Counted from the whole stretch's first letter, positions 24,197 through 45,668 are shown. The stretch: DNA of 62,901 nucleotides, filler included, from Octopus bimaculoides (GCF_001194135.2; 3 parts of 3 records of this genome joined end to end with filler, not necessarily neighbours in it), one strand, 5' to 3'. Made by a program: numbers and translations. Notes: generated from the sequence alone by a model not told the origin.

Positions 24197-24296
24197 ATGG
24201 AGATCACAAGAGACATTCTTCGAACCGTGTTGTACGGTCATTGGCGACTTACATCGAGTTTCACAGCAGGAGACGGTGGCGGAACGGCCGACACAG
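24197..24296 (+). CDS. PRDM12: PRDM12 coding exon 1 (MEITRDILRTVLYGHWRLTSSFTAGDGGGTADT/G)
   Basis: ATG at 24197 with an in-frame TGA 6 nt upstream; ITRDILRTVLYGHWR matches the conserved PRDM12 N-terminal motif ITSDILHSFLYGRWR; donor ACAG|GTAAGT, phase 1, fits exon 2. Confidence 0.88.
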
Positions 24297-24400
24297 GTAA
24301 GTTAATTTCTTAAAGTTTCTTACAACAGAACAAACATCTCGTTTATACTCAGGTAATTTGATGGTGACGACCACGATGATGATGATGATGATGATGATGA

Positions 24401-24800
24401 TAGTCCCACTGCGTGGCACCTTGGGCAAGTGTCTTCTACTATAGCCTCGGGCCAACCAAAGCCTTGTGAGTGGAATTCATAGACGGAAAATGAAAGAAGC
24501 CCGTCGTATATATGTATATATATATTGTGTGTATGTGTGTTTGTGTCTCCCTCTATAGCTGTATATCTGTGTATGTATGTATGTATGTATGTATGTACTT
24601 ATGTATGTGTTTGTCCCCCCAACATCGCTTGACAACCGATGCTGGCGTGTTTACGTCCTCGTAACTTAGCGGTTCGGCAAAAGAGACCGATAGAATAAGT
24701 ACTAGGCTTACAAAGAATAAGTCCTGGGGGTCGATTTGCTCGACTAAAGGCGGTGCTCCAGCATGGCCGCAGTCAAATGACTGAAACAAGAAAAAGTAAA
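24401..24800 (+). mobile_element. SINE family A copy (5'-truncated) at the start of PRDM12 intron 1
   Basis: agtcccactgcgtggcaccttgggcaagtgtc...cagcatggccgcagtcaaatgactgaaacaag. Confidence 0.85.
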
Positions 24801-24807
24801 GATAGAC

Positions 24808-24846
<39 letters not shown>

Positions 24847-25557
24847 NNNNNNNNNNNNNNNNNNNNNNNNNNNNNNNNNNNNNNNNNNNNNNNNNNNNNN
24901 NNNNNNNNNNNNNNNNNNNNNNNNNNNNNNNNNNNNNNNNNNNNNNNNNNNNNNNNNNNNNNNNNNNNNNNNNNNNNNNNNNNNNNNNNNNNNNNNNNNN
25001 NNNNNNNNNNNNNNNNNNNNNNNNNNNNNNNNNNNNNNNNNNNNNNNNNNNNNNNNNNNNNNNNNNNNNNNNNNNNNNNNNNNNNNNNNNNNNNNNNNNN
25101 NNNNNNNNNNNNNNNNNNNNNNNNNNNNNNNNNNNNNNNNNNNNNNNNNNNNNNNNNNNNNNNNNNNNNNNNNNNNNNNNNNNNNNNNNNNNNNNNNNNN
25201 NNNNNNNNNNNNNNNNNNNNNNNNNNNNNNNNNNNNNNNNNNNNNNNNNNNNNNNNNNNNNNNNNNNNNNNNNNNNNNNNNNNNNNNNNNNNNNNNNNNN
25301 NNNNNNNNNNNNNNNNNNNNNNNNNNNNNNNNNNNNNNNNNNNNNNNNNNNNNNNNNNNNNNNNNNNNNNNNNNNNNNNNNNNNNNNNNNNNNNNNNNNN
25401 NNNNNNNNNNNNNNNNNNNNNNNNNNNNNNNNNNNNNNNNNNNNNNNNNNNNNNNNNNNNNNNNNNNNNNNNNNNNNNNNNNNNNNNNNNNNNNNNNNNN
25501 NNNNNNNNNNNNNNNNNNNNNNNNNNNNNNNNNNNNNNNNNNNNNNNNNNNNNNNNN

Positions 25558-25596
<39 letters not shown>

Positions 25597-26826
25597 CAGA
25601 CATACAGACAGACAGACAGACAGATAGATAGATAGATGTACATTTATCCCCACGTAGAAAAAAAAATACAGCACCAGTGGTAGTAGTCGTGGTTTTTGAT
25701 GTAGGCGTTACCTTTTAAATAGACGACATACCATAAAGCCAACAAAACTTAGGGAAATTGGCGTTTGATGGTGGGCGGGGTCATGGAGCGAATCTGTTTC
25801 AACGTAAAGACCGCCCACCACAAGCATCAAACTCAAGTTCAATTTTTCAAGTTCATCTCTCTCTCACTCTGTCTCCCTCTATAGCTGTATATCTGTGTCC
25901 GTGTGTGTCTGTGTGCGCGTGCGCGTTTTGTTTTGCGCTTAGTTATAATAAACAAATCAACCCCAGGACTTATTCTTTGTAAGCCTAGTACTTATTCTAT
26001 CGAATTTGTGCCGAACCGCTAAGTTACGGGACGTAAACACACCAGCATCGGTTGTCAAGCGATGGTGGGGAAGGGGGACAAACACAGACACGCACAAATT
26101 TACACACACATTTGTTTAATGCGTAGGCGTGGCTGTCTGGTAAGAAGCNNNNNNNNNNNNNNNNNNNNNNNNNNNNNNNNNNNNNNNNNNNNNNNNNNNN
26201 NNNNNNNNNNNNNNNNNNNNNNNNNNNNNNNNNNNNNNNNNNNNNNNNNNNNNNNNNNNNNNNNNNNNNNNNNNNNNNNNNNNNNNNNNNNNNNNNNNNN
26301 NNNNNNNNNNNNNNNNNNNNNNNNNNNNNNNNNNNNNNNNNNNNNNNNNNNNNNNNNNNNNNNNNNNNNNNNNNNNNNNNNNNNNNNNNNNNNNNNNNNN
26401 NNNNNNNNNNNNNNNNNNNNNNNNNNNNNNNNNNNNNNNNNNNNNNNNNNNNNNNNNNNNNNNNNNNNNNNNNNNNNNNNNNNNNNNNNNNNNNNNNNNN
26501 NNNNNNNNNNNNNNNNNNNNNNNNNNNNNNNNNNNNNNNNNNNNNNNNNNNNNNNNNNNNNNNNNNNNNNNNNNNNNNNNNNNNNNNNNNNNNNNNNNNN
26601 NNNNNNNNNNNNNNNNNNNNNNNNNNNNNNNNNNNNNNNNNNNNNNNNNNNNNNNNNNNNNNNNNNNNNNNNNNNNNNNNNNNNNNNNNNNNNNNNNNNN
26701 NNNNNNNNNNNNNNNNNNNNNNNNNNNNNNNNNNNNNNNNNNNNNNNNNNNNNNNNNNNNNNNNNNNNNNNNNNNNNNNNNNNNNNNNNNNNNNNNNNNN
26801 NNNNNNNNNNNNNNNNNNNNNNNNNN

Positions 26827-27064
26827 GCTGTCAACTTAATGTGACAGTCCCCTGAAGGGAATAATACTACTGTTGGTTAGACCTAGGAAGCTGCACCGCT
26901 TCCTGTCGGCCTTGTCACATTTCCTGTGTCCTTATGTTTACAAGGGGGAGAGAACATAAGGACACAGGAAATGTGTCAAGGCTGACAGGAAGCGGTGCAG
27001 CTTCCTAGGTCTAACCAACAGTAGTATTATTCCCTTCAGGGGACTGTCACATTAAGTTGACAGC
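26827..27064. repeat. Near-perfect inverted repeat, 112-bp arms, 14-nt spacer, 2 mismatches
   Basis: 26827-26938 is the reverse complement of 26953-27064; the left arm starts at an N-gap edge. Confidence 0.95.
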
Positions 27065-29054
27065 CTACAACTACTTCATCATATCACTACTGCATAAATC
27101 TCTCTGAAAGATTTAGAAACGTATCATTTATAAATTTGAAATGGTATTAGTCTACAATAACCATTATTTAATGCAGATACACCCCTAAATGCCAAATTAA
27201 TTGCGGCATTCGTTCGCAGATTATATATTTTTTTATGAACGAACTCTGCTTAAAAACACAAATATAGCAGCAGCAGGCGAAAACTGTCCAGCAGTGGTGG
27301 TGAGAATGCTAGACACACATTTCTGCTTCTTTACGCTTCGTCAATAGCCTATATCTTTACTGTTAAACACAGTTCGCATGCTAAGAAGAATTTTGCCACT
27401 GGGTGCAAGCTGGCTCCTACCAACGAGTTGGACAACAGACCATATCAGAATCTGTTACAGGAAACTTCCGTACCCTCATCTACTTTGAAGATCATTCACC
27501 TTCATTGATGTTGCTTGGCAGAGAGACAAAATATGAAATTGTGGAATGGTACATTGTATAATGCAATTCCAAAGTCACTAAAATATATATGTGCGTGTGT
27601 GTGTATATGTGTATGTGTGTGTGCGCGCGCGCGCGTGTGTATGTATACACACACATACACATATGTACGCAAGTATGTATGTTTGTATGTATGTATGTAT
27701 CTATGTATGTAAGAATGTATGCAAGTCGTATGGAGCAGAATCACACTATCTTTAATAATAATAATATTTATTATATATATTCATATACATACATGTATAT
27801 ACACACACACACATACACACATATATATATACATATATTATATATATANNNNNNNNNNNNNNNNNNNNNNNNNNNNNNNNNNNNNNNNNNNNNNNNNNNN
27901 NNNNNNNNNNNNNNNNNNNNNNNNNNNNNNNNNNNNNNNNNNNNNNNNNNNNNNNNNNNNNNNNNNNNNNNNNNNNNNNNNNNNNNNNNNNNNNNNNNNN
28001 NNNNNNNNNNNNNNNNNNNNNNNNNNNNNNNNNNNNNNNNNNNNNNNNNNNNNNNNNNNNNNNNNNNNNNNNNNNNNNNNNNNNNNNNNNNNNNNNNNNN
28101 NNNNNNNNNNNNNNNNNNNNNNNNNNNNNNNNNNNNNNNNNNNNNNNNNNNNNNNNNNNNNNNNNNNNNNNNNNNNNNNTCTAACGTTGTGAAACCACAG
28201 AAAGTCATCTCTCTCCGTTCATTAATGAGTTTTTAAGTGTTTTCCACCTTTAACTACAGCGGAACCTAACATTAGTGGTTTGTCTTTGGTCTTACCAACG
28301 CGCGCGCGCGCAAGGCGGCGAGCTGGCGGAAACGTTAGCACGCCGGGCGAAATTCTTAGCGTTATTTCATCTGCTGCTACGTTCTGAGTTCAAATTCCGC
28401 CGAGGAGAGAGACGGGGGTAGAAAAAGAGAGAGAGAGAGGGGGGAAGAGAGAGAAAGAGAAAGAGAGAGAGAGAGAGTTATGGTTAGTGACGAAACAAAA
28501 CAAAATGGCGAGAGAAAAATGAAAGCAGATTGGAGAAAGATCGGCATAAGAGAAGAGGTGAAAAAAGAGAAGTAAGTAGAACAGCAGAGCCCCACCCGGC
28601 TCGACCCATCCTAGCGGTATAAAAATGGGCGGGTTAAATGTTATTCATTATGTTCAAGTTAAGTCATAAATACATTGTTGTCACTTTATGGAGTTTCGTA
28701 GCTGACTTCACTTACCACAATGGGAGGAGGGGGGAGCACGACAATAGTGGCGGATTCTGCTACTGGTTATATATGGTGGCTGTGACGATGTTATTTTGTA
28801 ATTGAATTTACCCGCGGGCTCGAACGTCGCCTACGAATTTCATATCCACCTCCCATTGTTCTTTCGTTTTCTGTTACTGTGTGGTGTTTTTTCTTTTCTT
28901 TTTTTTTTGTATATGTATCTCTTTCTTGTTAATGTCTCTCGCCCCCACTCTTGTCTCGCTTCATCTCTATCTCTCGATCTGTCTATACGCGCACATACAT
29001 ACATACATACATACATACATACATACAAACAAACATACATACCAGAAAGGTGAA

Positions 29055-29230
29055 AGCTAATTCGAAGACTACAGATCCAATCCATCACTGGAACTGTAAA
29101 AATCTGCAAAACTTTCCAGAAGTTTATCATTTTATCATTTAAATATATATGGGCATGTCTAGATATGTAATTCTATGCATAAGAATACATACAGGAAAAC
29201 AAAGCTTACAAATCTGCACATATACATCCA
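29055..29230 (+). mobile_element. 5'-truncated 3' end of the same RLE-LINE family (PRDM12 intron 1)
   Basis: gctaattcgaagactacagatccaatccatcactggaactgtaaaaatctgcaaaactttccagaagtttatcatt matches 19975-20050. Confidence 0.7.
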
Positions 29231-29480
29231 TACATCTATCCATCCATCCATACATCTATCCATCCATCCATCCATCCATACATGGTGGTTGTCTACTCCT
29301 TAAACAGAGTTTGACCACCTCCTGCACCTACACCTTAGCCCTTTCATGGCGTCTGATGTGGCTTTTTAAACCAGACAGTGTTTTGAAAAAACACCCACAC
29401 AGATTGCACCTCTGATTATATCTTGGAGTAACTTTCCTAATGTCTTCTATTTTCTAAAGAGGGCAGGATATACATGCATA

Positions 29481-29690
29481 TCGTTCGTTCGTTCGTTCGT
29501 TCATCCGTCGTTGTGGACAATGACCAAGGACATCACATGGGAGAAGAAACAGAGCAAGGTGTGTCAAGCAATGGCCGATAAGTCCGATCCATGCTCGAAA
29601 GACTGAGGCAGGTCGGGCACTGGTGGTCTGCTGTATCAGGCAAGGAATTCTGCCTCATATGCCCCATCCAACGTCAAAGTTTTCAATTCT
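29481..29690 (-). mobile_element. RTE-clade LINE 3' end with (GAAC)n tail
   Basis: Minus strand encodes HQCPTC + frameshift + FRAWIGLIGHCLTH, the RTE C-terminal zinc-finger-like motif (consensus CPxC.R.FRARIGL.SH.RTH), followed by (gaac)n. Confidence 0.65.
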
Positions 29691-29762
29691 ACTGTTTCCA
29701 TAATTTTTCCTTAGAAAATTCCCAACCAAGAACGCTTGTTAAATTCTTCACGCACAGGTTTC

Positions 29763-29950
29763 AAATTTTGGCACAAGGCCAGCAATTTGAGAGAAAAGGT
29801 AAGTCGATTACATTGATCCTAATGCTCGACTGGTACTTATTTTATCGACCCCGAAAAGATGAAAGGCAAAGTCGACCTCAGCGGAATTTGAACTCAAAAC
29901 GTAAAGACGGACGAAATGCCGCTAAGCATTTCTTCCGGCGTACCAGCTTG
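29763..29950 (-). mobile_element. SINE family B, antisense
   Basis: ctggtacttattttatcgaccccgaaaagatgaaaggcaaagtcgacctcagcggaatttgaactc. Confidence 0.8.
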
Positions 29951-31035
29951 CTAACTTTGTATTCTGTACATATAAACATTTAAAAGCGAAGTAGCTGATG
30001 AGAGAGGCTTGTACGTAGTCGTGCAATCTGCTAAAAATAACAGCAAAGTCTCCGTCAAATCACATCCTGCCCTCTTTAGAAAATAGAAGACATTAGGAAA
30101 GTTACTCCAAGATATAATATGTTTGAATAAAAGATGGAATGATCGTAGCTGGAACACTTTTGACAATAGATGGGTCTGATGGATTAAGCCTAACTTGTAA
30201 CTGGACAACCACGTAAAAGAGAGGAAGGAAAAAAAAAAAAAAATGGAACACTTGAGGAACAACTCTGATTAGTTGATCTAATGAGATTTAATGTTCTTTG
30301 AACGGATGCTGTTTGTTTCTAACCATTGTTAACTTTTGTTACATCGAACAAATAACAAATATCTAAATCAGAATAGGAATCCTCTGATCATTCTCTTTTA
30401 TTCTTCCATTCTGTTATTCCAACACTTTGTCTTATGGCAGTTTCGTTTCCTTTCATTTTTCGCGTTTCTTGATACACCAGTGGATTCGAGCAAGACGGTA
30501 GCCATAAGCAGCTAATGTTTTTTCTTTTGTCTTTTTTCTCCCCCTCACCATTTTTTTTATTCTCCTGCTAGGATTTTCTGCCAGTGGTCTCTTCTGCTGG
30601 TGGTTTCTGCTGGTCTTTTCCGCTCGTTCTCTTACATTTGCCAGTATATGTGACGTGTTGTCTGCTGGTTGCCTCATTTTTCTTCTCCAATACACCAGTG
30701 GATTCAAGCAGCCGACACTGGTGGACGTTTTTTTCTTTTTCAATTTTTTTTTCAATATATTTTTTTCTGTGAAGCCGACGAATGCGGGTCTTTGCACCTC
30801 ATTGAAGATAAAAGCAGAATGAACAAACTTGATGACATTGTACAGTCGACAATAGCACAATCTGTGCCCCCTACGGAATAGGTTTAAATATCAATAAATA
30901 TTCATTGTCGTCTCAAATAACAAGGAATTAGAAAGCCGCCGACATAATACTTTCCGCTTTTACGCATATACTGGCGCACATACACACACACAAACACAAA
31001 CTCACAGATACACACACACACACAAACTCACAGAT

Positions 31036-31068
<33 letters not shown>

Positions 31069-33282
31069 GGCGCACACATACATACATACATACACAGACA
31101 CATACATGCTCACACGCTAAACCTCCAACCGCACCTCACCGTCTGTCCAATGCCCACACACTTCCCCCTCCACCATCAGGCGACCTGCTTCACTCTATCG
31201 CATTATTATTATCATTATGATGATAATTAAAATATTTAAAAAATATTTATTTACGTTGGAAAGGATTATAGAAGCCTAAATAGTCTCCTCTTACTTATCA
31301 CGTCTCAAATATCTCTTCTTGAATCGGCCATCTTTCTGCTTTCATCCCTTCCACTCTTTCTTCACTCTCACCTCTCCTCACTCCTACCTTCGTTATTTAT
31401 CTTCTTATCGTTGTTTAATCTTTGTCTCTCTAGTTTCTTCTCCTCCTCCTCCTTTCCCTCTCCTGCGTCTTACTATCTACTTCACCTCCTCCACCTCCCT
31501 CGTTTTTCAGACTTTTCTTCTTTTTTTTTTTGCTTCTGTTCTTTTGTTTTCTTTCTTTTCTTTTTGAACTTTCGATTTTGTTTTTTCTTGTTTTTTTTTA
31601 ACAGATTTTATTTCTGTTTATTTATTTATCTATTTATTTTGTTCACAAGCTTCTCCCACCATCACCACCAGCCAAACCCTTTTCTGCCTCCTCCTCCAAT
31701 TATTATACTCCTCCTCTTATTCCTAAATGAAGGAAGATGCTTACCGACCACGTGAATCTAGGTCCAGTCCCTCTGGTGTGGCACCTTGGGCAAGTGTCTT
31801 CTACTATTGCTCCAGGTTGACCAAAGCTCTGTGAGTGTATTTGGTAGACATAAAAGAAGCTCCTGGTGTATAAACATGTGTATATACATTTGCGTATATA
31901 CATTTGTGTATATACATATGTTTGGGTCTTTTCTGTTTGGCTGCACCTGTGGAAATTTTAAAGTTCATTGAAAATTTAAAAATCTGGTTGTTTCGATGTA
32001 ATTTTCCACGCTGAATCTTTTTCTTATTTTTTGGAATTTTCAGAAAAAGTTTTGCAGATTTGTATTCTACACTCGAGAATTCATACGATTGTCCAAAAAC
32101 CCGCCAAGAATTTTGGTGATTTAAGGCTTATTTAGCTATTATTTTTAGCACATCTCACGACCACTTCATACCTCATGTATTTTTAAGCATATGACCACGT
32201 GGGTAAGCAGCTTCGTAACAGCTTGGCTTGTTACTATGGAAACAGGCACTTATATGTTTGTGGTTTTCGACTGGCTAAAATTACCCAAAATTTGCAAACT
32301 TTAAAAACTATTAACTCTTTATTTATTGACTTATGACAACAATGAATTTCCTGTCAATGATTACCATACAAAACTACACCAATACACCAAATATGAGACC
32401 AATTGGAACAAAAACTGAAGAAATTGCAAAGCAGCAGCGAAACAGAAAAGATCCTCTNNNNNNNNNNNNNNNNNNNNNNNNNNNNNNNNNNNNNNNNNNN
32501 NNNNNNNNNNNNNNNNNNNNNNNNNNNNNNNNNNNNNNNNNNNNNNNNNNNNNNNNNNNNNNNNNNNNNNNNNNNNNNNNNNNNNNNNNNNNNNNNNNNN
32601 NNNNNNNNNNNNNNNNNNNNNNNNNNNNNNNNNNNNNNNNNNNNNNNNNNNNNNNNNNNNNNNNNNNNNNNNNNNNNNNNNNNNNNNNNNNNNNNNNNNN
32701 NNNNNNNNNNNNNNNNNNNNNNNNNNNNNNNNNNNNNNNNNNNNNNNNNNNNNNNNNNNNNNNNNNNNNNNNNNNNNNNNNNNNNNNNNNNNNNNNNNNN
32801 NNNNNNNNNNNNNNNNNNNNNNNNNNNNNNNNNNNNNNNNNNNNNNNNNNNNNNNNNNNNNNNNNNNNNNNNNNNNNNNNNNNNNNNNNNNNNNNNNNNN
32901 NNNNNNNNNNNNNNNNNNNNNNNNNNNNNNNNNNNNNNNNNNNNNNNNNNNNNNNNNNNNNNNNNNNNNNNNNNNNNNNNNNNNNNNNNNNNNNNNNNNN
33001 NNNNNNNNNNNNNNNNNNNNNNNNNNNNNNNNNNNNNNNNNNNNNNNNNNNNNNNNNNNNNNNNNNNNNNNNNNNNNNNNNNNNNNNNNNNNNNNNNNNN
33101 NNNNNNNNNNNNNNNNNNNNNNNNNNNNNNNNNNNNNNNNNNNNNNNNNNNNNNNNNNNNNNNNNNNNNNNNNNNNNNNNNNNNNNNNNNNNNNNNNNNN
33201 NNNNNNNNNNNNNNNNNNNNNNNNNNNNNNNNNNNNNNNNNNNNNNNNNNNNNNNNNNNNNNNNNNNNNNNNNNNNNNNNNN

Positions 33283-33314
<32 letters not shown>

Positions 33315-33316
<2 letters not shown>

Positions 33317-33742
33317 AGGCGTAATGGCCTAGTGGTTAGGACAGCAGACTCCTGGTCATCGGATCGCAGTTTCGATTCCCAGACCGGGCGTTGTGAGTGT
33401 TTATTGAGCGAAAACACTTGAAGCTCCGCGAGACCCCGGCCGGGGTTGGTGGCGACCCCTGCTGTACTCTTTCACCCCAACTTTCTCTCATTCTTTCTTC
33501 TTGTTTCCGCTGTACATTGTATTTCAAAGGGGCCAGCCTTGTCACACTGTGTCACGCTGAATATCCCCGAGAACTATGTTAAGGGTACGCGTGTCTGTGG
33601 AGTGNNNNNNNNNNCCGAGAACTATGTTAAGGGTACGCGTGTCTGTGGAGTGCTCAGCCACTTGCACGTTAGTTTCACGAGCAGGCTGTTCCGTTGATCA
33701 GTTCAACTGGAACCCTCGTCGTCGTAACAGACGGAGTGCCAC
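33315..33742 (+). mobile_element. tRNA-derived SINE family C (resembles octopus OR-type SINEs; name tentative)
   Basis: tRNA-like head ggaggcgtaatggcctagtggttagg...gtttcgattcccagacc, body gtatttcaaagggccagccttgtcacac...cacttgcacgtt; 38-bp artefactual duplication around the 10-N gap. Confidence 0.8.
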
Positions 33743-33753
33743 GATATATATGC

Positions 33754-33787
<34 letters not shown>

Positions 33788-34601
33788 ATTGTTATGTATC
33801 ACATAGGGCATGTGCTTTAGCATTGAGTTTCTATATGAGTGTGTGCGCGCACCTTGTTCTGTATGCGTGTTTGCATTGTGTTGACGTATCTGTGTATTGT
33901 TACATGTGTGTGTCTATATATGCGTTATGTTGTGCCGTGTATGTGTATTGTGTTGTGTGTTCGATTCGAATTGTTCTATGCATGTCATATGTGCCTATGT
34001 TCACACACACACACACCTATGTTTGTATATAACTGACTCATCAAAAGGTATTAATAATGATCGTTCTTGACAAGATCAAAAAAAAAACATTACAAACTAT
34101 ATCTTCCCTTCAGTTGATATTATTATGATAATTATCATTATCGTTTTTTATTATGATAATTATCATTATCGTTTTTTATTATTATCGATATTATTATGTA
34201 TATGATTTCTATTTTTTCTTCCCTCAGTATTAAAAAAAATTGGGTGACGTGAAAAAATGGATGATCTTAGTTTCGTACGTTTCACTGAATCTTTCACTTC
34301 ACCACACATCACAGTTAATCTCTGTTTCTTTTTTTTTTCATGTGTGTGTGGGGGTGGTGTAAAAATGCAAAAGAATTCGAAATAAATATTAGCGGGGGAG
34401 AAAAAAAAACAGAAAGTCATGTTTATCGTTGATGTTTATTTTGATGTATCTGTCGTTGTTGTGTGTGCAAAGGAAATGGCAGACGACAGGATTAAAATTG
34501 ATTCGTAGTATTTTAGTTACATTCTGAGTTCAAATCTTGCTGATGTTGTCTTTGATTTTTACCATTTTGATAGTCATATAAAAATTAACTCCCAGTTATG
34601 T

Positions 34602-34670
34602 CAGTGGTTCTCAACCGGGGTCCATATGGCCCCTGAAGGTCCACATCAGATTTTTGGGGGTCCCAATTTC
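34602..34670 (+). mobile_element. hAT/Charlie-like terminus
   Basis: CAGTGGTTCTCAACCGGGG is a typical hAT-Charlie TIR start; a similar ggttctcaaaccttt end occurs at ~9188. Confidence 0.45.
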
Positions 34671-35244
34671 ATTCAAAAGGCGTATGGGGTGACCCAAGGT
34701 TATGAAAGAAGATAGTTACTCAAGATTTCACGTAGTGAGATCGAACTCGAAACCTAACAATTACAAAGCGCACTTCTTTACCATTTGGCCATTGCTGCGT
34801 CCATATATGACTATTCGTCGTTATTATTGATGTTGTCTGAGGCGGCAAGTTGGTAGAATCGTTAGCCGAAGTCGACTTTGCCTTTCATCCTTTCGGAGGT
34901 CGATGAAATAAGTACCAGTTATGCACTGAGGTCGATGTGATCGACTCCCCCCTTCCCCCTAATTTCAGGCCTTTTGCCTATAGTAGAAAGGATTATTATA
35001 TTTTGTTCTTTGTTCAAATTCCACGAAAGTCAACTTTGCCTTTGAACACTTCCAGGTCGATAAAATACAATACCAGTCATTCACTGTGGTTGATGGCTCC
35101 GACTTAATCCCTTACCATCAAACCTGCTCTGCTAGCCCTGCGTCTAGATTAAATGCGATTATTATCGATGTTGTTGTTGTTGTGGTTGTCATCAACGATG
35201 TTATTGTTTTTATTAATATTGTTTTACTTTCGATATTGCCACAG

Positions 35245-35438
35245 GGGACCGAAACCTGCTTCCGCTTCTGTCAACCCCGCCACAAGTGCGCTTAGGTTTC
35301 TCATCGATACCTACTTACCGTTTTGGCGTGTTCAGTAGCTGCTGGATCAAGGCCGGCACCGAGATGGGTCCTTACATCGGCCGAGTAGTACAGTGCTGTG
35401 AGATCAATATGCGGATACCGAACGAAACCATGTGGGAG
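35245..35438 (+). CDS. PRDM12: PRDM12 exon 2, PR/SET domain N-terminal part (GDRNLLPLLSTPPQVRLGFSSIPTYRFGVFSSCWIKAGTEMGPYIGRVVQCCEINMRIPNETMWE)
   Basis: Acceptor ttgccacAG, donor GAG|GTAAGC; WIKAGTEMGP and MWE match PRDM12; phase 1 in, phase 0 out. Not in the ORF track. Confidence 0.95.
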
Positions 35439-35763
35439 GTAAGCCAAACGTAGATTCCATTCCTTTTCGTGAATTCTTGCAAGAAAAAGGTCGATCAAAG
35501 CCTTGTGACTGGAATTAGGAGACGGAAACTGGAAGAAGCCCGTCATCCGTATTCTCTTATTGTTTGACTTGTTTCGGCCATTTGGCTGGGGGCCATGCTG
35601 GAGCACCGCTTTTTAGTCGAAGAAATCGACCCATGGACTTTTTCTTTGCAAGCCTGGTACTTATTCTATCGGTCGCTTCTGCCGAACCGCTAATTAGGGG
35701 GGGGCGTATACACAGACACAACGACACACATAAATGTGTGCGTGTGTGTGGGTAGGTGGGGGC

Positions 35764-35926
35764 GCAGATGTGGCTCTGTGACAAGAAGTTTGCTTCCTAA
35801 CCACATGATTCCGGGTTCAGTCCCTTTGTGTGGCACCTTGGGTAAGTACTTCCTCTATGGCTGCGGGTCGACCCAAAGCAAAGTGAGTGGATATGATAGA
35901 CGGAAACAGAAAGAAGCCTGTCAAGT
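35764..35926 (+). mobile_element. SINE family A head/core, PRDM12 intron 2
   Basis: gatgtggctctgtgacaagaag...ccgggttcagtccc...gcaccttggg; runs into an N gap. Confidence 0.8.
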
Positions 35927-36179
35927 AANNNNNNNNNNNNNNNNNNNNNNNNNNNNNNNNNNNNNNNNNNNNNNNNNNNNNNNNNNNNNNNNNNNNNNNN
36001 NNNNNNNNNNNNNNNNNNNNNNNNNNNNNNNNNNNNNNNNNNNNNNNNNNNNNNNNNNNNNNNNNNNNNNNNNNNNNNNNNNNNNNNNNNNNNNNNNNNN
36101 NNNNNNNNNNNNNNNNNNNNNNNNNNNNNNNNNNTGTATGTATATGTATATATTTCATACATATATAGTTTTTGTGCAT

Positions 36180-36252
36180 GTGCACGTACGCGCGTGTTTG
36201 TATTTGCCCCCATCACAGCGTGACAACTGGTGTTGGTGACAAACACAGACAC

Positions 36253-36294
<42 letters not shown>

Positions 36295-36445
36295 GACGGG
36301 CTTCTTTCAGTTTCTGTCTACCAAATCTACTCACAAAGCTTTGGTCGGCCTGAGACTATAGAAGAAGGCATTTGCCCAAGGTGCAGTGGGATTGAACTCG
36401 GAACCACGTGGTTAGGAAGCAAGCTTCTTAGCACACACCCACTCC
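36180..36445 (-). mobile_element. SINE family A copy, antisense, PRDM12 intron 2
   Basis: Reverse complement of the family A head/core (cacgacgggcttctttcagtttc...ttgcccaaggtgc...gaaccacgtgg). Confidence 0.8.
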
Positions 36446-36529
36446 CACTCCTATTATATATCTGTAGATAGATAGATATCATCCGTTTGTTTATTTATTT
36501 TATTTATTTGCTTTTTTTATTGTGAATAG

Positions 36530-36685
36530 GTTTTCGACGAAAGTGGAGGAATCCTGTATTTTCTGGAAACTGACCACAGTACGCCTTCTTCGTGGCTCTC
36601 TTATATCAACTGTGCCAGGAATGACCAAGAGCAAAATTTGGAAATCTACCAGTCCGGCAGAGAAATATATTACAGAGCTCTAAAG
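36530..36685 (+). CDS. PRDM12: PRDM12 exon 3, PR/SET core (VFDESGGILYFLETDHSTPSSWLSYINCARNDQEQNLEIYQSGREIYYRALK)
   Basis: 156-nt phase 0/0 exon, tgaatAG acceptor, AAG|GTAAAA donor; SW..YI.CARN.QEQNL is the PR-domain signature. Confidence 0.95.
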
Positions 36686-37159
36686 GTAAAAAAAACTATC
36701 AGCTACGTGCGTGCGTGCGTGTGTGTAAATATAAGTATATACAACACTCCCTTCTTTCGATAGTTTACACCGCCCACTACGCTCAATTCTCTAAACTCCG
36801 CCCTTATATTGCTATTGTAGCCAACCAGGTTTCGAGTTTGATGATCTTTCTGTTACTGCCTACTAGGAATTAACATAAGTTAACCAATAGCCGTCCTGAT
36901 ATGTCTGTACCAAAGTGTGCGTGAGCAGAACTGTTAGTGAGGGGGTGGGATACTTCCGACGCTTAACGTTCTGAGTTCGAAATCCAGTCTAGATCAACTT
37001 ATCCTTTCATCCCTCTCGGGGCGGTAATATACGATACCAGTCATGTACTGGAGTCGATGTGATCAACTAAGACCGTTGAGTCAAAATTAGAAAGAATTAT
37101 TATTATTTATTTATTTATTTTTGTAAATTCTATTTAATATATTCTCAGTCATAAGCCTT

Positions 37160-37372
37160 GTGAGCTGGTAGAAACGACAGCGCGTCGGGCGAAATGCTTA
37201 GCTGTATTTCGTCTGTCTTTACGTTCTGAGTTCAAATTCAACCGAGGTCGACTTTGCCTTTCATCCTTTTGGGGGTCAATAAATTAAGTACCAGTTGCGT
37301 ACTGGGTCGATCTAATCGACAGACACCCCACTGAAAAAAAATGTCGGGCCTTGTGCCTAAAGTAGTAAAGAA
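37160..37372 (+). mobile_element. SINE family B, PRDM12 intron 3
   Basis: gagctggtagaaacg...gttctgagttcaaattcaaccgaggtcgactttgcctttcatcc...ggccttgtgcct. Confidence 0.85.
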
Positions 37373-38529
37373 TATATTCTTTGTTATCTCTTTATCATTG
37401 TTTCCCCTTTTGATAATCTTTGTGTGTTGTATTTCTCCTTTTGATGTACTCCCCAATGTCTTGAGTCCTTGTGGCAATCATCATCATCATCATTATTGTT
37501 ATACTCATTTCAATATATATATATANNNNNNNNNNNNNNNNNNNNNNNNNNNNNNNNNNNNNNNNNNNNNNNNNNNNNNNNNNNNNNNNNNNNNNNNNNN
37601 NNNNNNNNNNNNNNNNNNNNNNNNNNNNNNNNNNNNNNNNNNNNNNNNNNNNNNNNNNNNNNNNNNNNNNNNNNNNNNNNNNNNNNNNNNNNNNNNNNNN
37701 NNNNNNNNNNNNNNNNNNNNNNNNNNNNNNNNNNNNNNNNNNNNNNNNNNNNNNNNNNNNNNNNNNNNNNNNNNNNNNNNNNNNNNNNNNNNNNNNNNNN
37801 NNNNNNNNNNNNNNNNNNNNNNNNNNNNNNNNNNNNNNNNNNNNNNNNNNNNNNNNNNNNNNNNNNNNNNNNNNNNNNNNNNNNNNNNNNNNNNNNNNNN
37901 NNNNNNNNNNNNNNNNNNNNNNNNNNNNNNNNNNNNNNNNNNNNNNNNNNNNNNNNNNNNNNNNNNNNNNNNNNNNNNNNNNNNNNNNNNNNNNNNNNNN
38001 NNNNNNNNNNNNNNNNNNNNNNNNNNNNNNNNNNNNNNNNNNNNNNNNNNNNNNNNNNNNNNNNNNNNNNNNNNNNNNNNNNNNNNNNNNNNNNNNNNNN
38101 NNNNNNNNNNNNNNNNNNNNNNNNNNNNNNNNNNNNNNNNNNNNNNNNNNNNNNNNNNNNNNNNNNNNNNTGAATGTTGTTTTCACTGTCCATTTTTTCC
38201 TGTCTTGGTTTGTGTTTGCCACCTTGGAATCCTCTGTGTAGTGGGTTGATCCACTACTCAGGAAGAGACTATTCTAGAGTACGTTCTGTCTTGTCTTCGA
38301 AACGTCTAGATAGAATAGAGACAGCTGATGAAGGGATATTCCAAGTGGCTTTCCGTTTTCCTATGTGTTCGTTCCGTTGTCTGTAGTTTATTGTTCTAAC
38401 GTCCTGTACCCTGATATGCATGTATATACACATGTAGATGTAAGTATGTACATATATGTGTGTATACATGTGTATATATATTCTTTGTATTATATATATA
38501 TATATATATAATCTTAATCTTCCCTGCAG

Positions 38530-38644
38530 GATATACCGCCTGACCAAGAGCTGTTGGTGTGGTACAGCTCCAGACAAGATGCCTATATGGGAATTCCCGG
38601 AATGACGTCATTCAGTAACAGTGAATATGTCAAATGGAAAGCAG
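38530..38644 (+). CDS. PRDM12: PRDM12 exon 4, PR/SET C-terminus (DIPPDQELLVWYSSRQDAYMGIPGMTSFSNSEYVKWKA/E)
   Basis: ccctgcAG acceptor, GCAG|GTCAGT donor; IPPDQELLVWY...GIPG is PRDM12-specific. Confidence 0.95.
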
Positions 38645-38684
38645 GTCAGTAAATTTTTGTTTGTTGTGTTTTTTTTCTCTGCGT

Positions 38685-38736
<52 letters not shown>

Positions 38737-39101
38737 TTATACTTATGTTAGCAGAAGTGAATATCGATCGTTTGGTGCTCCTATCGTCAGGAGAGCTGAA
38801 TCCAATATTTCGGGTCTTTGGCAGTCATCCGAAACTCCAGCCAGGAAAAGAAATCATGCACAAATTCATACAAGCATGTCCACGGTTTATCGATAACATC
38901 CGTTACATTAAGAAATAATTAACGGATTAACGGTTATCGAAGTGAACTTTTCGATTAACGTTGCCCACCTTTGACATACGCACACACACACATACATACG
39001 TCAGTGACCTACCCTGGGTGTTAACGAATGATAGGAACTCATACATCTGTCTCTATAGCCTTTTATTATTATTATTATTATTATTTCGTTTGTACTTTCA
39101 G

Positions 39102-39389
39102 AATCCGTTAACCGAAACTGTAAAACGACTCCGCATTCCGTACAGTCACAAGTGACTCAACAAAATCCACAATGGAACCATTCAGATGGTAACAGGACAT
39201 CTTCGAATTCTTTGCCGACCCTCGGCACACGATTACATTGTGTTTTGTGTCGGAGAGGTTTCAATTCAAGGAGCAATCTCCGTTCACATATGCGCATCCA
39301 TACCCTGGAGAAACCGTTCGTTTGCAAATTCTGTAACCGTAGCTTCAGTCAGTCGTCGACATTACGGAACCACACACGTCTTCATACAG
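39102..39389 (+). CDS. PRDM12: PRDM12 exon 5, linker plus C2H2 fingers 1 and 2
   Basis: tactttcAG acceptor, ACAG|GTGAGT donor; encodes [50 protein letters not shown]; overlaps ORF 39152..39451. Confidence 0.97.
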
Positions 39390-39411
39390 GTGAGTATGTG
39401 ACATTCATGCA

Positions 39412-39660
39412 TTCTGTCATCTTTTACCTTTCCCTTGTTTCAGTTATTTGAACTGCGGTCATGCTGGAGCACCACCTTGATAGGTTTTAGTCGAGCGAAT
39501 TGAATTCAGTACTTATTAGGTTTTATTTTGGGTTTTTAAAGTTTAGTACTTATTTTATCGGACCTCTTATCAAATCGCTAAGTCACAAGGATGGAAACGA
39601 AACAACACCGATTGGCAAACGATAAGGGGGTACAAACACAGACACAAAGACACGCACGGA
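39412..39660 (-). mobile_element. SINE family A 3' half, PRDM12 intron 5
   Basis: ttcagttatttgaactgcggtcatgctggagcaccacc...gtacttatt...caaacacagacac. Confidence 0.75.
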
Positions 39661-39791
39661 CACACACACACGTGTATAAGAGTAAACAGTTTCAGAGCTC
39701 ATACATATTCATACCATAAGGAGCAGGTACAGAATTATGTATGGAAGGATATAAAGGTTATAATTTCTGTTGTACAATTTCTATTTTTCAG

Positions 39792-40021
39792 GTGAGAAGC
39801 CTTATCGTTGTACAGTGTGCCAGAGTTCGTATTCACAGTTGGCAGGACTGAGAGCCCATCAGAGGAGTTCGCGTCACAGGCCACACTCTGAGGAATCATT
39901 TAGCAACAGTTCTTACCATAAGCAGAGACCCGTCGTCGGACTGACGTCTTCATCGTCATCATCGTCATCGTCGTCGTCGTCATCAACAACAACAACAGCA
40001 ACACAGAATAATCCTCCATAA
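39792..40021 (+). CDS. PRDM12: PRDM12 exon 6, finger 3, Ser/Thr run and stop
   Basis: tttttcAG acceptor; G|[28 protein letters not shown] then S13-T4-ATQNNPP-TAA; overlaps ORF 39770..40021. Confidence 0.97.
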
Positions 40022-42904: not shown

Positions 42905-43262
42905 TTTATTCTTTCACTGTGGCCATGCTGGAGCACTGTCTTTAGTCGAGCAAATCGACCCCAGCACTTATTTTTTGTAAGCCTAGTACTTATTCTGTCA
43001 GTCGCTTTAGCCGAATTGCTAAGTTACGGGGACATGAACACACTAACATTGGTTGTCAAGCAATATTGCGGGGACGGACACAGAAACACACACATATATA
43101 TACGATGGGCTTCTTTCAGTTTCTGTCTACCAAATCCACTCACAAGGCTTTGGTCGGCCCGAGAGTATAGTAGAAGACACTTGCCCAAAGTGCCATGCAG
43201 TGGGACTGAACCCGGAACCATGTGGTTGGTAAGCAAGCTACTTACCACACAGCCACTCCTAC
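42905..43262 (-). mobile_element. SINE family A, full length, caspase last intron
   Basis: Complete reverse-complement copy from tail to ccacacagccactcct head. Confidence 0.85.
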
Positions 43263-43407
43263 ATTGTCGAAATATATTGCAATGAATTTCATATTTCAAA
43301 ATGTTGGCTGATATTTGTTTGCAGGTCTTAAACTGAAGAACACTCTTCTCTCTTAGCAACACCCAACATTTCTCTCTAATCTTCTTTCTCTTTGTGGGAG
43401 AACACAG

Positions 43408-44200: not shown

Positions 44201-44484
44201 TGGCCATGACAACAATTCCATTTGGCTTCATGAATCGACTCAAGCAGAGCAGATTGCCAAAGATCTGGAACCATGTGGTTGGGAAACCAGCTTCTTACCA
44301 CATGGCCTGTGGAGTGTTTTTTAACCTTTCAGGAAATAAAAGAGCAGCAAATGATGAAAATGTATCTCATTTTCTTCCATTTCACTTTTCATGTAAAAAC
44401 AGTAGAAATAAACCATCCATACAGTAATCTTAGAGAAAGTTGTGTTGGAATATCACCATTTAGAAAATATACATATATAGATTC

Positions 44485-44682
44485 TTTTACTCTTTTACTT
44501 GTTTCAGTCATTTGACTGTGTCCATGCTGGAGCACCGCCTTTAGTCGAGCAAATCGACCCCAGGACTTATTCTTTGGATGCCTAGTACTTATTCTATCGG
44601 TCTCTTTTGCCGAACCGCTAAGTTACAGGGATGTAAGCACACCAGCATCAGTTGTCAAGCGATGTTGGGGGGACAAACACAG

Positions 44683-44730
<48 letters not shown>

Positions 44731-45285
44731 GACGGGCTTCTTTCAGTCCCACTGCATGGCACCTTAAGCAAATGTCTTCTACTATAGCCTTAGGTCAACC
44801 AAAGCCTTGTGAGCTGGCAGAAACGTTAGCACGGTGGGCGAAACGCTTAGCAGTATTTCGTCTACCGTTACATTCTGAGTTCAAATTCCACCAAGGTTGA
44901 CTTTGCCTTTCATCCTTTCGGGGTGGATAAATTTAGTACCAGTTACGCACTAGGGTCGATGTAATCAACTTAATCCCTTTCTCTATCCTTGTTTGTCCTG
45001 TCTATGTTTAGCCCCCTGGGGAGCAACAAAGAAATAAGAAACTGAAAGAAATTCGTGTGTGTGTGTGTATTTTTGCGTCTGTGTGTATTTGTGTACCCCC
45101 TCCCCACCACTGCTTGACAACTGATGTTGGTGTGTTTGCATCCCTGTGGCTTAGTGGTTCAGCAAAAGGGACTGATGGAATAAGTACTAGGCTTACGGGG
45201 AATAAGTCCTGGGGTTGATTCATTCAACTAAAGGCGATGCTCCAGCATAGCCACAGTCAAATGACTGAAACAAATAAAAGAATAT
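44485..45285. mobile_element. Nested SINE cluster: family A (-, 44485-44745), A core (+), family B (+, 44808-44985), family A 3' half (+, 45040-45282)
   Basis: Consecutive matches to family A and B consensus in mixed orientation. Confidence 0.75.
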
Positions 45286-45341
45286 ACTTCTTCCTCAGAC
45301 ATATTATCATGGAAAGATCAAAGAATTCAAACATTACTTAC

Positions 45342-45668
45342 AGTCATTCACAGCATCAAAAGAACAATCTTTCTGATCATTTTTGTTTTGACATGCTTGG
45401 ATGAAAAATAACTTCGGCTTATCTTGAAGAGACGGGCATTTGTCTGTATTAAAGAGTTCTACCAACTCAATAATCCCCACAGGTATACTGTCGCTTCCAT
45501 ATACTTCACCTTTTGCTCCATGTGATAGGATGAAGCAGGTAAAACAATCATACTGCGTGTGGTCTTCATCACTATATTTTTTTAAACATGCTTTCATTTC
45601 ATCGCTACTTAAATTTTGATGTATTTTTACAGTGAATTGAAATTTTTCAAATAAATCCTGAAGTTTCT
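45342..45668 (-). CDS. Caspase-8-like catalytic exon (KLQDLFEKFQFTV...DCFTCFILSHG...CPSLQDKPKLFFIQACQN...AVND/C)
   Basis: tattacAG acceptor, GACT|GTAAGT donor; catalytic SHG and QAC; CPSL.xKPKxFFIQACQ resembles caspase-8/10; overlaps ORF 45334..45597. Confidence 0.96.

What the first reader, a model, noticed from the sequence alone, without database searches (positions are those of the whole stretch)
24197..40021. Complete PRDM12 (vertebrate nociceptor-specifying factor) orthologue in a probable octopus
Seen: six GT-AG exons splice into an open 360-aa protein with a PR/SET domain and three C2H2 fingers. The ORF track shows only the two finger exons (5 and 6), so the PR domain would be missed. 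Against the recalled human sequence the fingers are 19/23, 20/23 and 20/25 identical, with identical recognition-helix residues and the same HX5H third finger. Established: vertebrate PRDM12 is required for nociceptor development, is mutated in congenital insensitivity to pain (HSAN8), and recruits the G9a methyltransferase via its zinc fingers. Inference: a cephalopod may retain the same DNA/G9a interface, which bears on the origin of nociceptor programmes and on cephalopod pain. PRDM12 orthologues are known from other invertebrates, so the gene itself is not new; its role in this animal is the open question.
Basis: partly seen in the sequence, partly recalled or inferred. Interest (0 to 1): 0.8.

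Follow-up and report, generated by a model that had tools for sequence, protein, structure and literature searches.

The report
Octopus PRDM12 gene, complete and intact
This is a real, complete and conserved octopus copy of PRDM12, the transcription-factor gene that vertebrates need to make pain-sensing neurons; the gene was already known in octopuses and other invertebrates, so the find is solid but ordinary, and nothing here shows what it does in an octopus.

Summary
Six GT-AG exons (24197-40021, + strand) splice into a 1083-nt ORF of 360 aa, with a PR/SET domain and three C2H2 fingers. All assembly gaps lie in introns. The gap-free Octopus vulgaris chromosome has the same six exons with identical lengths and splice sites, and nothing PRDM12-like in its intron 1, so no exon is hidden.

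The protein is a PRDM12 orthologue by five tests:
- database hits (all PRDM12);
- ranking against solved PR domains;
- a 144-sequence PR-domain tree, with PRDM6 and PRDM14 as the nearest outgroups;
- invariant finger helices;
- five intron positions and phases shared with a bivalve and a hemichordate.

dN/dS against O. vulgaris is 0.058. A spliced Sepia pharaonis transcript supports the junctions.

Amphioxus Prdm12, with equally similar fingers, reportedly fails a vertebrate assay, so a retained DNA/G9a interface is plausible but not shown. No cephalopod expression or function data exist.

The gene is already annotated in O. vulgaris, O. sinensis and S. pharaonis, and all three models are defective. 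Low novelty.

The parts
24197..24296 (+). Exon 1 (100 nt, ends in phase 1). Holds the start codon and the conserved N-terminal motif MEITRDILRTVLYGHWR (24197-24247).
   Evidence: An in-frame TGA lies two codons upstream, and the donor is CAG|gtaagt. Exon length and splice site are the same in O. vulgaris. The motif aligns to I-T/S-x-D/E-I/V-L-x-x-x-LYG-x-W from cnidarians to vertebrates.
24297..35244 (+). Intron 1 (10,948 nt as assembled). Contains five N gaps: 24847-25557, 26149-26826, 27849-28179, 32458-33282 and 33605-33614.
   Evidence: It is colinear with the O. vulgaris intron 1 (27,227 nt, no N). No PRDM12-like coding sequence is found there. The phase 1 position is shared with Solemya, Saccoglossus, a fish and Nematostella. 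The acceptor is confirmed by transcript against genome in Sepia pharaonis.
35245..35438 (+). Exon 2 (194 nt). First part of the PR/SET domain, including WIKAGTEMGPY.
   Evidence: Acceptor cacag|GG, donor GAG|gtaagc. 95.9% identical to O. vulgaris. It ends at MWE|V, phase 0, which is conserved in all species mapped and confirmed by the spliced Sepia transcript.
36530..36685 (+). Exon 3 (156 nt). Central PR domain (VFDESGG...YYRALK). Holds the residues equivalent to human W160, R168, E172 and N174.
   Evidence: An in-frame stop sits at the acceptor, so the exon can only be read by splicing. The exon is present with intact splice sites in O. vulgaris although that species' annotation skips it.
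38530..38644 (+). Exon 4 (115 nt, ends in phase 1). End of the PR domain (DIPPDQELLVWY) and start of the linker.
   Evidence: 98.3% identical to O. vulgaris. The same donor is used by both Octopus annotations. 'KWKA|ES' matches 'KWIAES' in the Sepia transcript.
39102..39389 (+). Exon 5 (288 nt). Linker plus zinc fingers 1 (39233-39301) and 2 (39317-39385).
   Evidence: Finger coordinates are. The helices SRSNLRS and QSSTLRN are invariant in 35 orthologues.
39792..40021 (+). Exon 6 (230 nt including TAA). Holds zinc finger 3 (39803-39877, HX5H), the C-terminal tail and a poly-Ser/Thr tract (39950-40000).
   Evidence: Intron 5 (phase 1, in the TGEKP linker) is shared with Solemya and Saccoglossus and is absent in the fish mapped here. 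The poly-Ser tract is three codons longer than in O. vulgaris and O. sinensis.
35439..36529 (+). Intron 2 (1,091 nt; gap 35929-36134).
   Evidence: GT-AG, phase 0. The flanks are colinear with O. vulgaris.
36686..38529 (+).
   Evidence: GT-AG, phase 0. The window interval around the gap is 1,077 nt against 1,065 nt in O. vulgaris.
38645..39101 (+). Intron 4 (457 nt, no gap).
   Evidence: GT-AG, phase 1. The position in the linker is shared with all species mapped.
39390..39791 (+). Intron 5 (402 nt, no gap).
   Evidence: GT-AG, phase 1. It is 4.1-4.2 kb in O. vulgaris and O. sinensis.

Best explanation
The locus is the single-copy PRDM12 orthologue of an octopodid octopus. It is closely related to, but not the same species as, O. 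vulgaris and O. sinensis. The gene is intact, has six exons and is under strong purifying selection.

It encodes a 360-aa nuclear transcriptional regulator with three parts:
- a short conserved N-terminal motif;
- a PR/SET domain of the PRDM12 type;
- three C2H2 fingers whose helices are invariant across Metazoa.

The mechanism is inferred from vertebrate PRDM12, not shown here. The protein probably lacks intrinsic methyltransferase activity. It probably acts as a sequence- or partner-directed repressor that recruits an H3K9 methyltransferase (G9a/EHMT) through its fingers. Its likely role is to set neuronal subtype identity during neurogenesis. Whether those neurons include nociceptors in an octopus is unknown.
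For: Shown here:
- The exact six-exon ORF.
- Pfam PR domain plus C2H2 fingers.
- Top database hits are PRDM12 from Octopus (83-97% identity) through cnidarians and vertebrates (44-58% identity).
- The PR domain scores 153.5 bits to human PRDM12 3ep0, against 93.9 or less for PRDM14, 9, 2, 1, 5, 4, 10, MECOM, 16 and 11.
- In an NJ tree of 144 PR domains, the model groups with the Sepia sequences (200/200) and then with molluscs. It sits inside a 32-member clade that holds all 12 named PRDM12 sequences and no others (137/200).
- The nearest outside clusters are named PRDM6 and PRDM14.
- All five intron positions and phases are shared with Solemya and Saccoglossus, four with a fish and three with Nematostella.
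- Exon lengths and splice sites are identical in O. vulgaris and O. sinensis.
- dN/dS = 0.058 with dS = 0.198 over 357 codons.
- Exons are 91-98% identical to O. vulgaris, against 88% for aligned non-exonic DNA.
- A spliced Sepia pharaonis transcript (99% identical to its genome) confirms the intron 1 acceptor, intron 2 and the intron 3 donor at homologous positions. It starts at the same Met, with an upstream in-frame stop.
- Five of seven paper-documented human CIP missense positions are identical (G115, W160, R168, E172, N174). D151 is E and A152 is T.

From the literature:
- PRDM12 lacks intrinsic activity and works with G9a, via the fingers in mouse and Xenopus (PMC8585061; PMC8502974).
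- Prdm12 is ancestral to cnidarians plus bilaterians (PMC4760075).
- A bivalve PRDM12 peaks at the trochophore stage, when neurogenesis begins (PMC10451705).
Against: - There is no transcript evidence from this species or genus. Junction support comes from conservation, from annotations of congeners and from a cuttlefish transcript.
- Nothing here tests DNA binding, G9a binding or expression.
- Amphioxus Prdm12 has fingers as similar to vertebrates as the octopus ones, yet reportedly lacks the vertebrate En1-inducing activity.
- Bootstrap support for the PRDM12 clade is moderate (68%). It comes from a simple NJ method on 139 columns.
- The AlphaFold model was of low confidence outside the fingers.
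Confidence: 0.93

Rival explanations
1. The gene belongs to another PRDM subfamily, such as PRDM6 or PRDM14 (the nearest relatives), and only resembles PRDM12 through generic PR and C2H2 similarity.
For: Vervoort et al. report a weak Prdm6+Prdm12 grouping. In my tree the PRDM6 cluster is the nearest outgroup.
Against: - Mean tree distance from the model is 0.77 to the PRDM12 cluster, against 1.22 to PRDM6 and 1.25 to PRDM14.
- All named top hits are PRDM12.
- The three-finger architecture, with invariant PRDM12-specific helices and an HX5H third finger, is present.
- The gene structure is identical to bivalve and hemichordate PRDM12.
Confidence: 0.01
2. The locus is a decaying or mis-assembled copy, so the open frame is an artefact of joining pieces across gaps.
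For: Seven N gaps fall inside the gene span. Two gaps in the piece are flanked by exact duplicated sequence, which shows imperfect scaffolding. Intron 5 is ten times shorter than in the congeners.
Against: - No gap touches an exon.
- Order and orientation match a gap-free chromosome.
- All exons have identical lengths and splice sites in two other species.
- dN/dS is 0.058.
Confidence: 0.02
3. The 360-aa model is incomplete: a further coding exon, or an alternative 5' exon, lies in a gap or in the large intron 1.
For: Intron 1 carries five gaps. It also holds a block (about 30260-31060) as conserved as the exons. Vertebrate proteins have about 25 more N-terminal residues.
Against: - The Sepia transcript starts at the homologous Met, with an in-frame stop seven codons upstream, and has no extra segment at any junction.
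- The O. vulgaris annotation joins exon 1 directly to exon 2.
- tblastn with 11 orthologues finds nothing in the O. vulgaris intron 1.
- The ORF in the conserved block has lower amino-acid identity (81%) than nucleotide identity (91%) and no Pfam hit.
- Non-coding 5' exons or rare isoforms are not excluded.
Confidence: 0.05
4. This is a functional rival to the reader's inference. In octopus, PRDM12 would specify central or other neuronal subtypes, as it does for vertebrate V1 interneuron progenitors and hypothalamic neurons and in amphioxus nerve-cord cells. It would have no special link to nociceptors, and the nociceptor role would be a vertebrate novelty tied to TrkA/NGF.
For: - Amphioxus Prdm12 is expressed in nerve-cord cell populations (PMC9953854).
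- Vertebrate PRDM12 also acts in the p1 domain and hypothalamus (title list).
- Its nociceptor role works through TrkA (PMC7434219).
- Amphioxus protein lacks one vertebrate activity.
- The fly evidence concerns Hamlet. The Prdm12 subfamily was lost in pancrustaceans, and Hamlet is, to my knowledge, a Prdm3/16-type gene rather than a Prdm12 orthologue.
Against: No data either way in any mollusc beyond a bulk trochophore-stage expression peak. The deep conservation of the fingers is compatible with conserved targets.
Confidence: 0.5

Closest known systems
Vertebrate PRDM12 (human Q9H4Q4, 367 aa; PR-domain structure 3ep0)
   Same: - Same architecture: N-terminal motif, PR domain and three C2H2 fingers, the third being HX5H.
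- PR domain about 51% identical (65/127 against frog).
- Finger block 67/81 identical, with identical recognition helices.
- Introns 1-4 are at the same positions and phases. The human positions c.223/224 and c.682/683 both fit phase 1.
- Residues equivalent to CIP positions G115, W160, R168, E172 and N174 are identical.
   Different: - Lacks the vertebrate N-terminal extension of about 25 aa.
- The region between the N-motif and the PR domain is shorter.
- The PR-to-finger linker is unrelated in sequence.
- A poly-Ser/Thr tract sits where the human protein has the polyalanine tract (aa 344-359).
- Octopus has an extra intron in the ZF2-ZF3 linker. It is shared with bivalve and hemichordate and absent in the fish mapped here. 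Human has five coding exons.
- D151 is E and A152 is T.
Annotated cephalopod PRDM12 models: O. vulgaris 'domain zinc finger 12b' (P0001, 305 aa), O. sinensis 'PR domain zinc finger protein 12-like' (P0002, 284 aa), Sepia pharaonis fragment (P0121, 166 aa)
   Same: They are the orthologous locus. The neighbouring DED-caspase gene is the same. Identity is 97-98% in the shared exons for the two Octopus species.
   Different: All three public models are defective:
- O. vulgaris skips exon 3, which removes 52 aa of the PR domain.
- O. sinensis starts at an internal Met in exon 2.
- Sepia starts with an N-terminal peptide that does not match the conserved exon 1 and reads through the exon 3 donor into the intron.

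The window's six-exon model is full length. Applied to O. vulgaris, it gives an intact 357-aa ORF.
Other invertebrate PRDM12 (Solemya, Haliotis, Patella, Mulinia lateralis, Lineus, Saccoglossus, Branchiostoma, Nematostella)
   Same: Same domain set and finger helices. PR domain 54-58% identical, finger block 69-72/81. The five introns are identical in Solemya and Saccoglossus. Ml-PRDM12 is 283 aa with one PR domain and three fingers.
   Different: The cephalopod proteins have a longer, Q/S-rich linker and tail. Several mollusc annotations lack the N-terminal motif exon, probably because the models are incomplete.
PRDM6 and PRDM14 (nearest paralogous subfamilies)
   Same: PR domain of the same fold class, followed by C2H2 fingers.
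   Different: PR-domain distance from the model is 1.22-1.25, against 0.77 within PRDM12. Finger numbers and sequences differ. Human PRDM14 scores 93.9 bits against 153.5 for PRDM12.

Membership tests
PRDM12 subfamily of PR-domain zinc-finger proteins | An N-terminal PR/SET domain of the PRDM type | tested here: met
   Pfam PF21549 PRDM2_PR, 1.9e-35, aa 50-172, covering 120 of 123 profile positions. SET (PF00856) at 2e-09.
PRDM12 subfamily of PR-domain zinc-finger proteins | PR domain closer to PRDM12 than to any paralogue | tested here: met
   - 153.5 bits to human PRDM12 (3ep0), against 93.9 for PRDM14, 74 for PRDM9 and lower for PRDM2, 1, 5, 4, 10, MECOM, 16 and 11.
- The NJ tree places the model inside the clade of all named PRDM12 sequences (137/200).
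- The PRDM6 and PRDM14 clusters lie outside.
- PRDM8, 13 and 15 were not individually named in the tree, but none appears among the top 120 full-length hits.
PRDM12 subfamily of PR-domain zinc-finger proteins | Exactly three C-terminal C2H2 fingers with the PRDM12 helices ([21 protein letters not shown]), the third finger being C-X2-C-X12-H-X5-H | tested here: met
   Fingers at aa 233-255, 261-283 and 289-313. These helix residues are invariant in 35 orthologues from cnidarians to tetrapods. 67/81 identical to frog and zebrafish over the finger block.
PRDM12 subfamily of PR-domain zinc-finger proteins | Conserved motif upstream of the PR domain (I-T/S-x-D/E-I/V-L-x-x-x-L-Y-G-x-W) | tested here: met
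   MEITRDILRTVLYGHWR. 10/17 identical to frog, amphioxus and Solemya, and 13/17 to Sepia.
PRDM12 subfamily of PR-domain zinc-finger proteins | Orthologous gene structure (shared intron positions and phases) | tested here: met
   I1 (phase 1), I2 (phase 0, MWE|V), I3 (phase 0, K|DIPPDQ), I4 (phase 1, in the linker) and I5 (phase 1, HT|G|EKPY) are identical in Solemya and Saccoglossus. A fish shares I1-I4 and Nematostella shares I1, I2 and I4. The Sepia transcript against its genome confirms I1-I3.
PRDM12 subfamily of PR-domain zinc-finger proteins | Best hits in a comprehensive protein database are PRDM12 (forward half of a reciprocal test), and the gene is single copy in octopus | tested here: met
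   Named hits among the top 120 of 5.8 billion clusters are PRDM12, except one multi-finger ZNF. There is one hit each from O. vulgaris and O. sinensis. A strict reverse search of human PRDM12 against this species' proteome could not be run.
PRDM12 subfamily of PR-domain zinc-finger proteins | No intrinsic methyltransferase activity; recruits G9a/EHMT2 through the fingers | not testable with these tools
   Known for mouse and Xenopus. Here it is inferred only from sequence conservation. The amphioxus counter-example shows that conservation is not proof.
PRDM12 subfamily of PR-domain zinc-finger proteins | Expression in, and requirement for, developing nociceptive or other neuronal lineages | not testable with these tools
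   No cephalopod PRDM12 expression or function was found in the literature searches. The only mollusc datum is a bulk RNA-seq peak at the trochophore stage in Mulinia.
Functional (non-pseudogene) protein-coding gene | Intact ORF, conserved splice sites and purifying selection | tested here: met
   dN/dS = 0.058 over 357 codons against O. vulgaris.

The most novel reading that the evidence does not exclude
Octopus PRDM12 is expressed in, and required for, a peripheral nociceptive sensory-neuron lineage and acts through the same finger-EHMT/G9a module as in vertebrates. That would make nociceptor specification by PRDM12 a bilaterian-ancestral programme rather than a vertebrate one. It would also provide a molecular marker for cephalopod nociceptors.
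Probability: 0.2. Interest if true: 0.7.

Novelty: already known. Interest (0 to 1): 0.25.

Why it matters
If PRDM12 marks nociceptors in octopus, it would give a genetic handle on cephalopod pain biology and support a deep origin of the nociceptor programme.

The sequence alone does not move that question. The gene's presence in molluscs and in the genus Octopus is already public, and the conserved fingers are a family-wide trait.

The practical value is modest but real. The three public cephalopod genome annotations of this gene found here are truncated or mis-spliced. Expression studies that count reads on those models, or orthology tables built from them, may under-detect or misclassify PRDM12. 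The six-exon model corrects this.

Tried and rejected
- Hidden exon in gaps or intron 1: tblastn with 11 orthologues found nothing in the O. vulgaris intron 1. In the window's introns it found only a weak, non-conserved minus-strand C2H2-like fragment at about 29346-29426.
- Conserved intronic block as an exon: rejected. The ORF is open in both species, but amino-acid identity is lower than nucleotide identity, the sequence is low-complexity and there is no Pfam hit.
- Rfam scan of the whole piece: no family reached threshold.
- AlphaFold2 on the full model with 35 orthologues: mean pLDDT 54, with only the fingers confident (78-88). The N-terminal motif was not resolved, so I ran no fold search.
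- Source of the runs SRR9970012 and SRR9970007: not found in papers. I identified them indirectly, by a 99% match to the Sepia pharaonis genome.
- Primary papers (Chen 2015, Nagy 2015, Thelie 2015) are not held. I used reviews and case reports instead. The variants D31Y, I102N and H289L are recalled from memory only and are not used as evidence.
- My first exon scan used a human sequence recalled from memory. All conclusions were later re-derived with database sequences.
- The species of the window could not be determined. No window-encoded protein appeared among the database hits.

Full report
**Observation**

Six blocks on the + strand resemble PRDM12 and are colinear (the query was a sequence recalled from memory, used only as a lead). 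Their boundaries are 24197-24296, 35245-35438, 36530-36685, 38530-38644, 39102-39389 and 39792-40021. Every intron is GT-AG and the phases agree. The spliced CDS is 1083 nt and encodes exactly 360 aa. An in-frame TGA lies two codons upstream of the ATG.

**Gap test**

The piece has eight N runs, seven of them inside the gene span.

- None touches an exon: five lie in intron 1, one in intron 2 and one in intron 3.
- A colinear chain of 32 blocks (15.4 kb aligned, mean identity 85%) links window 23555-44471 to a gap-free stretch of O. vulgaris chromosome OX597835.1. Both sides of each gap have the same order and strand.
- Some gaps are underestimates. For example, 846 nt here corresponds to 3.2 kb in O. 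vulgaris at 32458-33282.
- The 10-N gap at 33605-33614 and the gap at 49416-49869 are flanked by exact 38- and 55-nt duplicates, so they are unmerged overlaps. The first gap sits in an (AGAT)n run.
- O. vulgaris has the same six exons, with identical lengths and splice sites, apart from a 9-nt difference in the poly-Ser tract. O. sinensis has exons 2-6 likewise; its exon 1 lies outside the fetched locus.
- Searching eleven PRDM12 orthologues against the 27.2-kb O. vulgaris intron 1 finds nothing.

No coding exon is hidden.

**What it is**

- Pfam finds a PRDM-type PR domain (1.9e-35), SET and C2H2 fingers.
- In a search of 5.8 billion protein clusters, the best hits are O. vulgaris (E = 1.9e-189) and O. 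sinensis (2.5e-185). After them come PRDM12 proteins from cnidarians, molluscs, a nemertean, echinoderms, hemichordates, amphioxus and vertebrates, at 44-58% identity.
- Against all solved PR domains, the PR region alone scores 153.5 bits to human PRDM12 (3ep0). PRDM14 scores 93.9, PRDM9 74, and PRDM2, 1, 5, 4, 10, MECOM, 16 and 11 score less.
- The PDB lacks PRDM6, 8, 13 and 15, so I ran the exhaustive representative search with the PR domain (2035 hits) and built a neighbour-joining tree of 144 PR domains (139 columns, 200 bootstraps).
- In that tree the model groups with the two Sepia sequences (200/200), then with gastropods and a bivalve (114/200), then with a nemertean.
- It sits inside a 32-member clade that holds all 12 named PRDM12 sequences and none of the other 112 (137/200).
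- The nearest outside clusters are named PRDM6 (Nematostella, Orbicella) and PRDM14 (rodents, lamprey, starfish). This matches the weak Prdm6+Prdm12 affinity reported by Vervoort et al. (PMC4760075).

**Gene structure**

I derived exact exon maps for four distant orthologues. All five octopus introns have counterparts at the same position and phase in the bivalve Solemya and the hemichordate Saccoglossus. A fish shares introns 1-4 and lacks intron 5. Nematostella shares introns 1, 2 and 4. The published human splice variants c.224-2 and c.682+1 both imply phase 1 junctions, in agreement with introns 1 and 4. Octopus therefore keeps an intron in the ZF2-ZF3 linker that it shares with a bivalve and a hemichordate and that the fish mapped here lacks.

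**Transcript support**

No octopus transcript was available. A 355-aa protein (P0003) comes from intron-less 2.2-kb contigs assembled from two sequencing runs.

- It is colinear with the model across every junction.
- It starts at the homologous Met, with an in-frame stop seven codons upstream.
- It maps at 99% identity, in two blocks 1.8 kb apart, to assembly GCA_903632075.3, which two papers name as Sepia pharaonis.
- The mapping confirms three junctions at the positions used in the octopus model, the first within one codon in a variable stretch: the intron 1 acceptor (phase 1), intron 2 (GT-AG, phase 0, MWE|I) and the intron 3 donor (phase 0, K|DIPP).
- The two Octopus annotations between them use all five of the model's junctions.

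**Constraint**

Against O. vulgaris, 348 of 357 codons encode the same residue. dS is 0.198 and dN 0.0116, giving dN/dS = 0.058. Exons are 91-98% identical, against 88% for aligned non-exonic DNA. The gene is functional.

The counts 19/23, 20/23 and 20/25 and the HX5H third finger reproduce against rhinoceros and frog sequences. This level of identity is not special to cephalopods:

| Species (against frog) | ZF1 | ZF2 | ZF3 |
|---|---|---|---|
| Amphioxus | 19/23 | 18/23 | 20/25 |
| Solemya | 19/23 | 19/23 | 21/25 |
| Nematostella | 18/23 | 17/23 | 22/25 |

. The helix residues are invariant in all 35 orthologues aligned.

The review PMC8585061 reports that amphioxus Prdm12 lacks the vertebrate En1-inducing activity. 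It suggests that C-terminal differences, including the fingers, may be responsible. [quoted passage not shown] The inference of a retained DNA/G9a interface is therefore reasonable but not demonstrated.

Of seven human CIP missense positions documented in papers I could read, five are identical in octopus (G115, W160, R168, E172, N174). D151 is E and A152 is T.

**Function**

The mechanism is by analogy: a PR-domain protein without catalytic activity that recruits an H3K9 methyltransferase and fixes neuronal subtype identity.

I found no paper on PRDM12 expression or function in any cephalopod. The only mollusc datum is a bulk expression peak at the trochophore stage in Mulinia. In amphioxus the gene marks nerve-cord cell populations. 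The Drosophila evidence often cited concerns Hamlet. The Prdm12 subfamily was lost in pancrustaceans, so to my knowledge Hamlet is not a Prdm12 orthologue. A nociceptor role in octopus is an open question, and I rate it at about one in five.

**Novelty**

The orthologue is already in public databases for O. vulgaris, O. sinensis and S. pharaonis. All three models are defective:

- O. vulgaris skips exon 3.
- O. sinensis is truncated at the N-terminus.
- S. pharaonis is a fragment that reads through into an intron.

Transferred to O. vulgaris, it gives an intact 357-aa ORF. This is an annotation improvement, not a discovery.

**Verdict**

The functional inference is untested. The finding is already known, with interest of about 0.25.

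Noticed in passing
L003 (O. vulgaris OX597835.1), L004 (O. sinensis CM016880.1), L009 (Sepia pharaonis CAHIKZ030004826.1): All three public cephalopod genome annotations of PRDM12 are wrong in different ways. The O. vulgaris model skips exon 3 although the exon and its splice sites are intact. The O. sinensis model starts at an internal Met in exon 2. The Sepia model starts with an N-terminal peptide that does not match the conserved exon 1 and reads through the exon 3 donor into the intron.
   Followed up: yes
window 30260-31060 (intron 1); peak at 30764-30963: An intronic block is 94-99% identical to O. vulgaris, as conserved as the coding exons, against about 88% for other aligned non-coding DNA. 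Its minus-strand ORF (30453-30860) is open in both species but shows no coding constraint and has no Pfam hit. It is a candidate conserved regulatory element of PRDM12.
   Followed up: partly
window 45334-45597, minus strand: This is a caspase-domain exon (Pfam Peptidase_C14, 1.5e-20). In O. vulgaris and O. sinensis the gene downstream of PRDM12, on the opposite strand, is a DED + Peptidase_C14 caspase, so synteny is conserved. The rest of the gene in the window was not modelled.
   Followed up: partly
window 33605-33614, 49416-49869 and 24847-25557: The 10-N gap is flanked by an exact 38-nt duplicate and the 454-N gap by an exact 55-nt duplicate, each abutting the gap. These are unmerged contig overlaps, so the true sequence is probably continuous. 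The 711-N gap sits inside an (AGAT)n microsatellite.
   Followed up: yes
window 37526-38170: A 645-N gap in intron 3 lies inside the finding's range but is missing from the list of gaps attached to the finding. It does not touch an exon.
   Followed up: yes
window 39390-39791 (intron 5) and 24297-35244 (intron 1): Intron 5 is 402 nt here but 4.1-4.2 kb in O. vulgaris and O. sinensis, with no gap in the window. This is either an insertion in those species or a deletion or collapse here. Intron 1 is 10.9 kb as assembled, against 27.2 kb in O. vulgaris.
   Followed up: partly
window 39950-40000: The C-terminal poly-Ser/Thr tract is three codons longer than in O. vulgaris and O. sinensis. It lies in the tail where human PRDM12 carries the polyalanine tract whose expansion is pathogenic. 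The homopolymer tail is a recurring but compositionally different feature.
   Followed up: partly
window 29346-29426, minus strand (intron 1): A lone C2H2-finger-like fragment (…CNLCGCFFKTLSGLKSHIRRH) has only weak similarity and is not found in the O. vulgaris intron 1. It is probably a relic of a transposed or decayed finger gene.
   Followed up: partly
window 24402-24813, 42912-43263, 44482-44747 and 47112-47461: Copies of a dispersed repeat of about 350 nt each match many places, in both orientations, in the O. vulgaris and O. sinensis loci at 77-90% identity. It is probably a SINE-like element and was not classified.
   Followed up: no
L005-L008 compared with the window: The intron in the TGEKP linker between fingers 2 and 3 (phase 1) is shared by octopus, a bivalve and a hemichordate. 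It is absent in the fish mapped and in Nematostella. The fish has an extra phase 1 intron inside the PR domain (SVP|GEG).
   Followed up: partly
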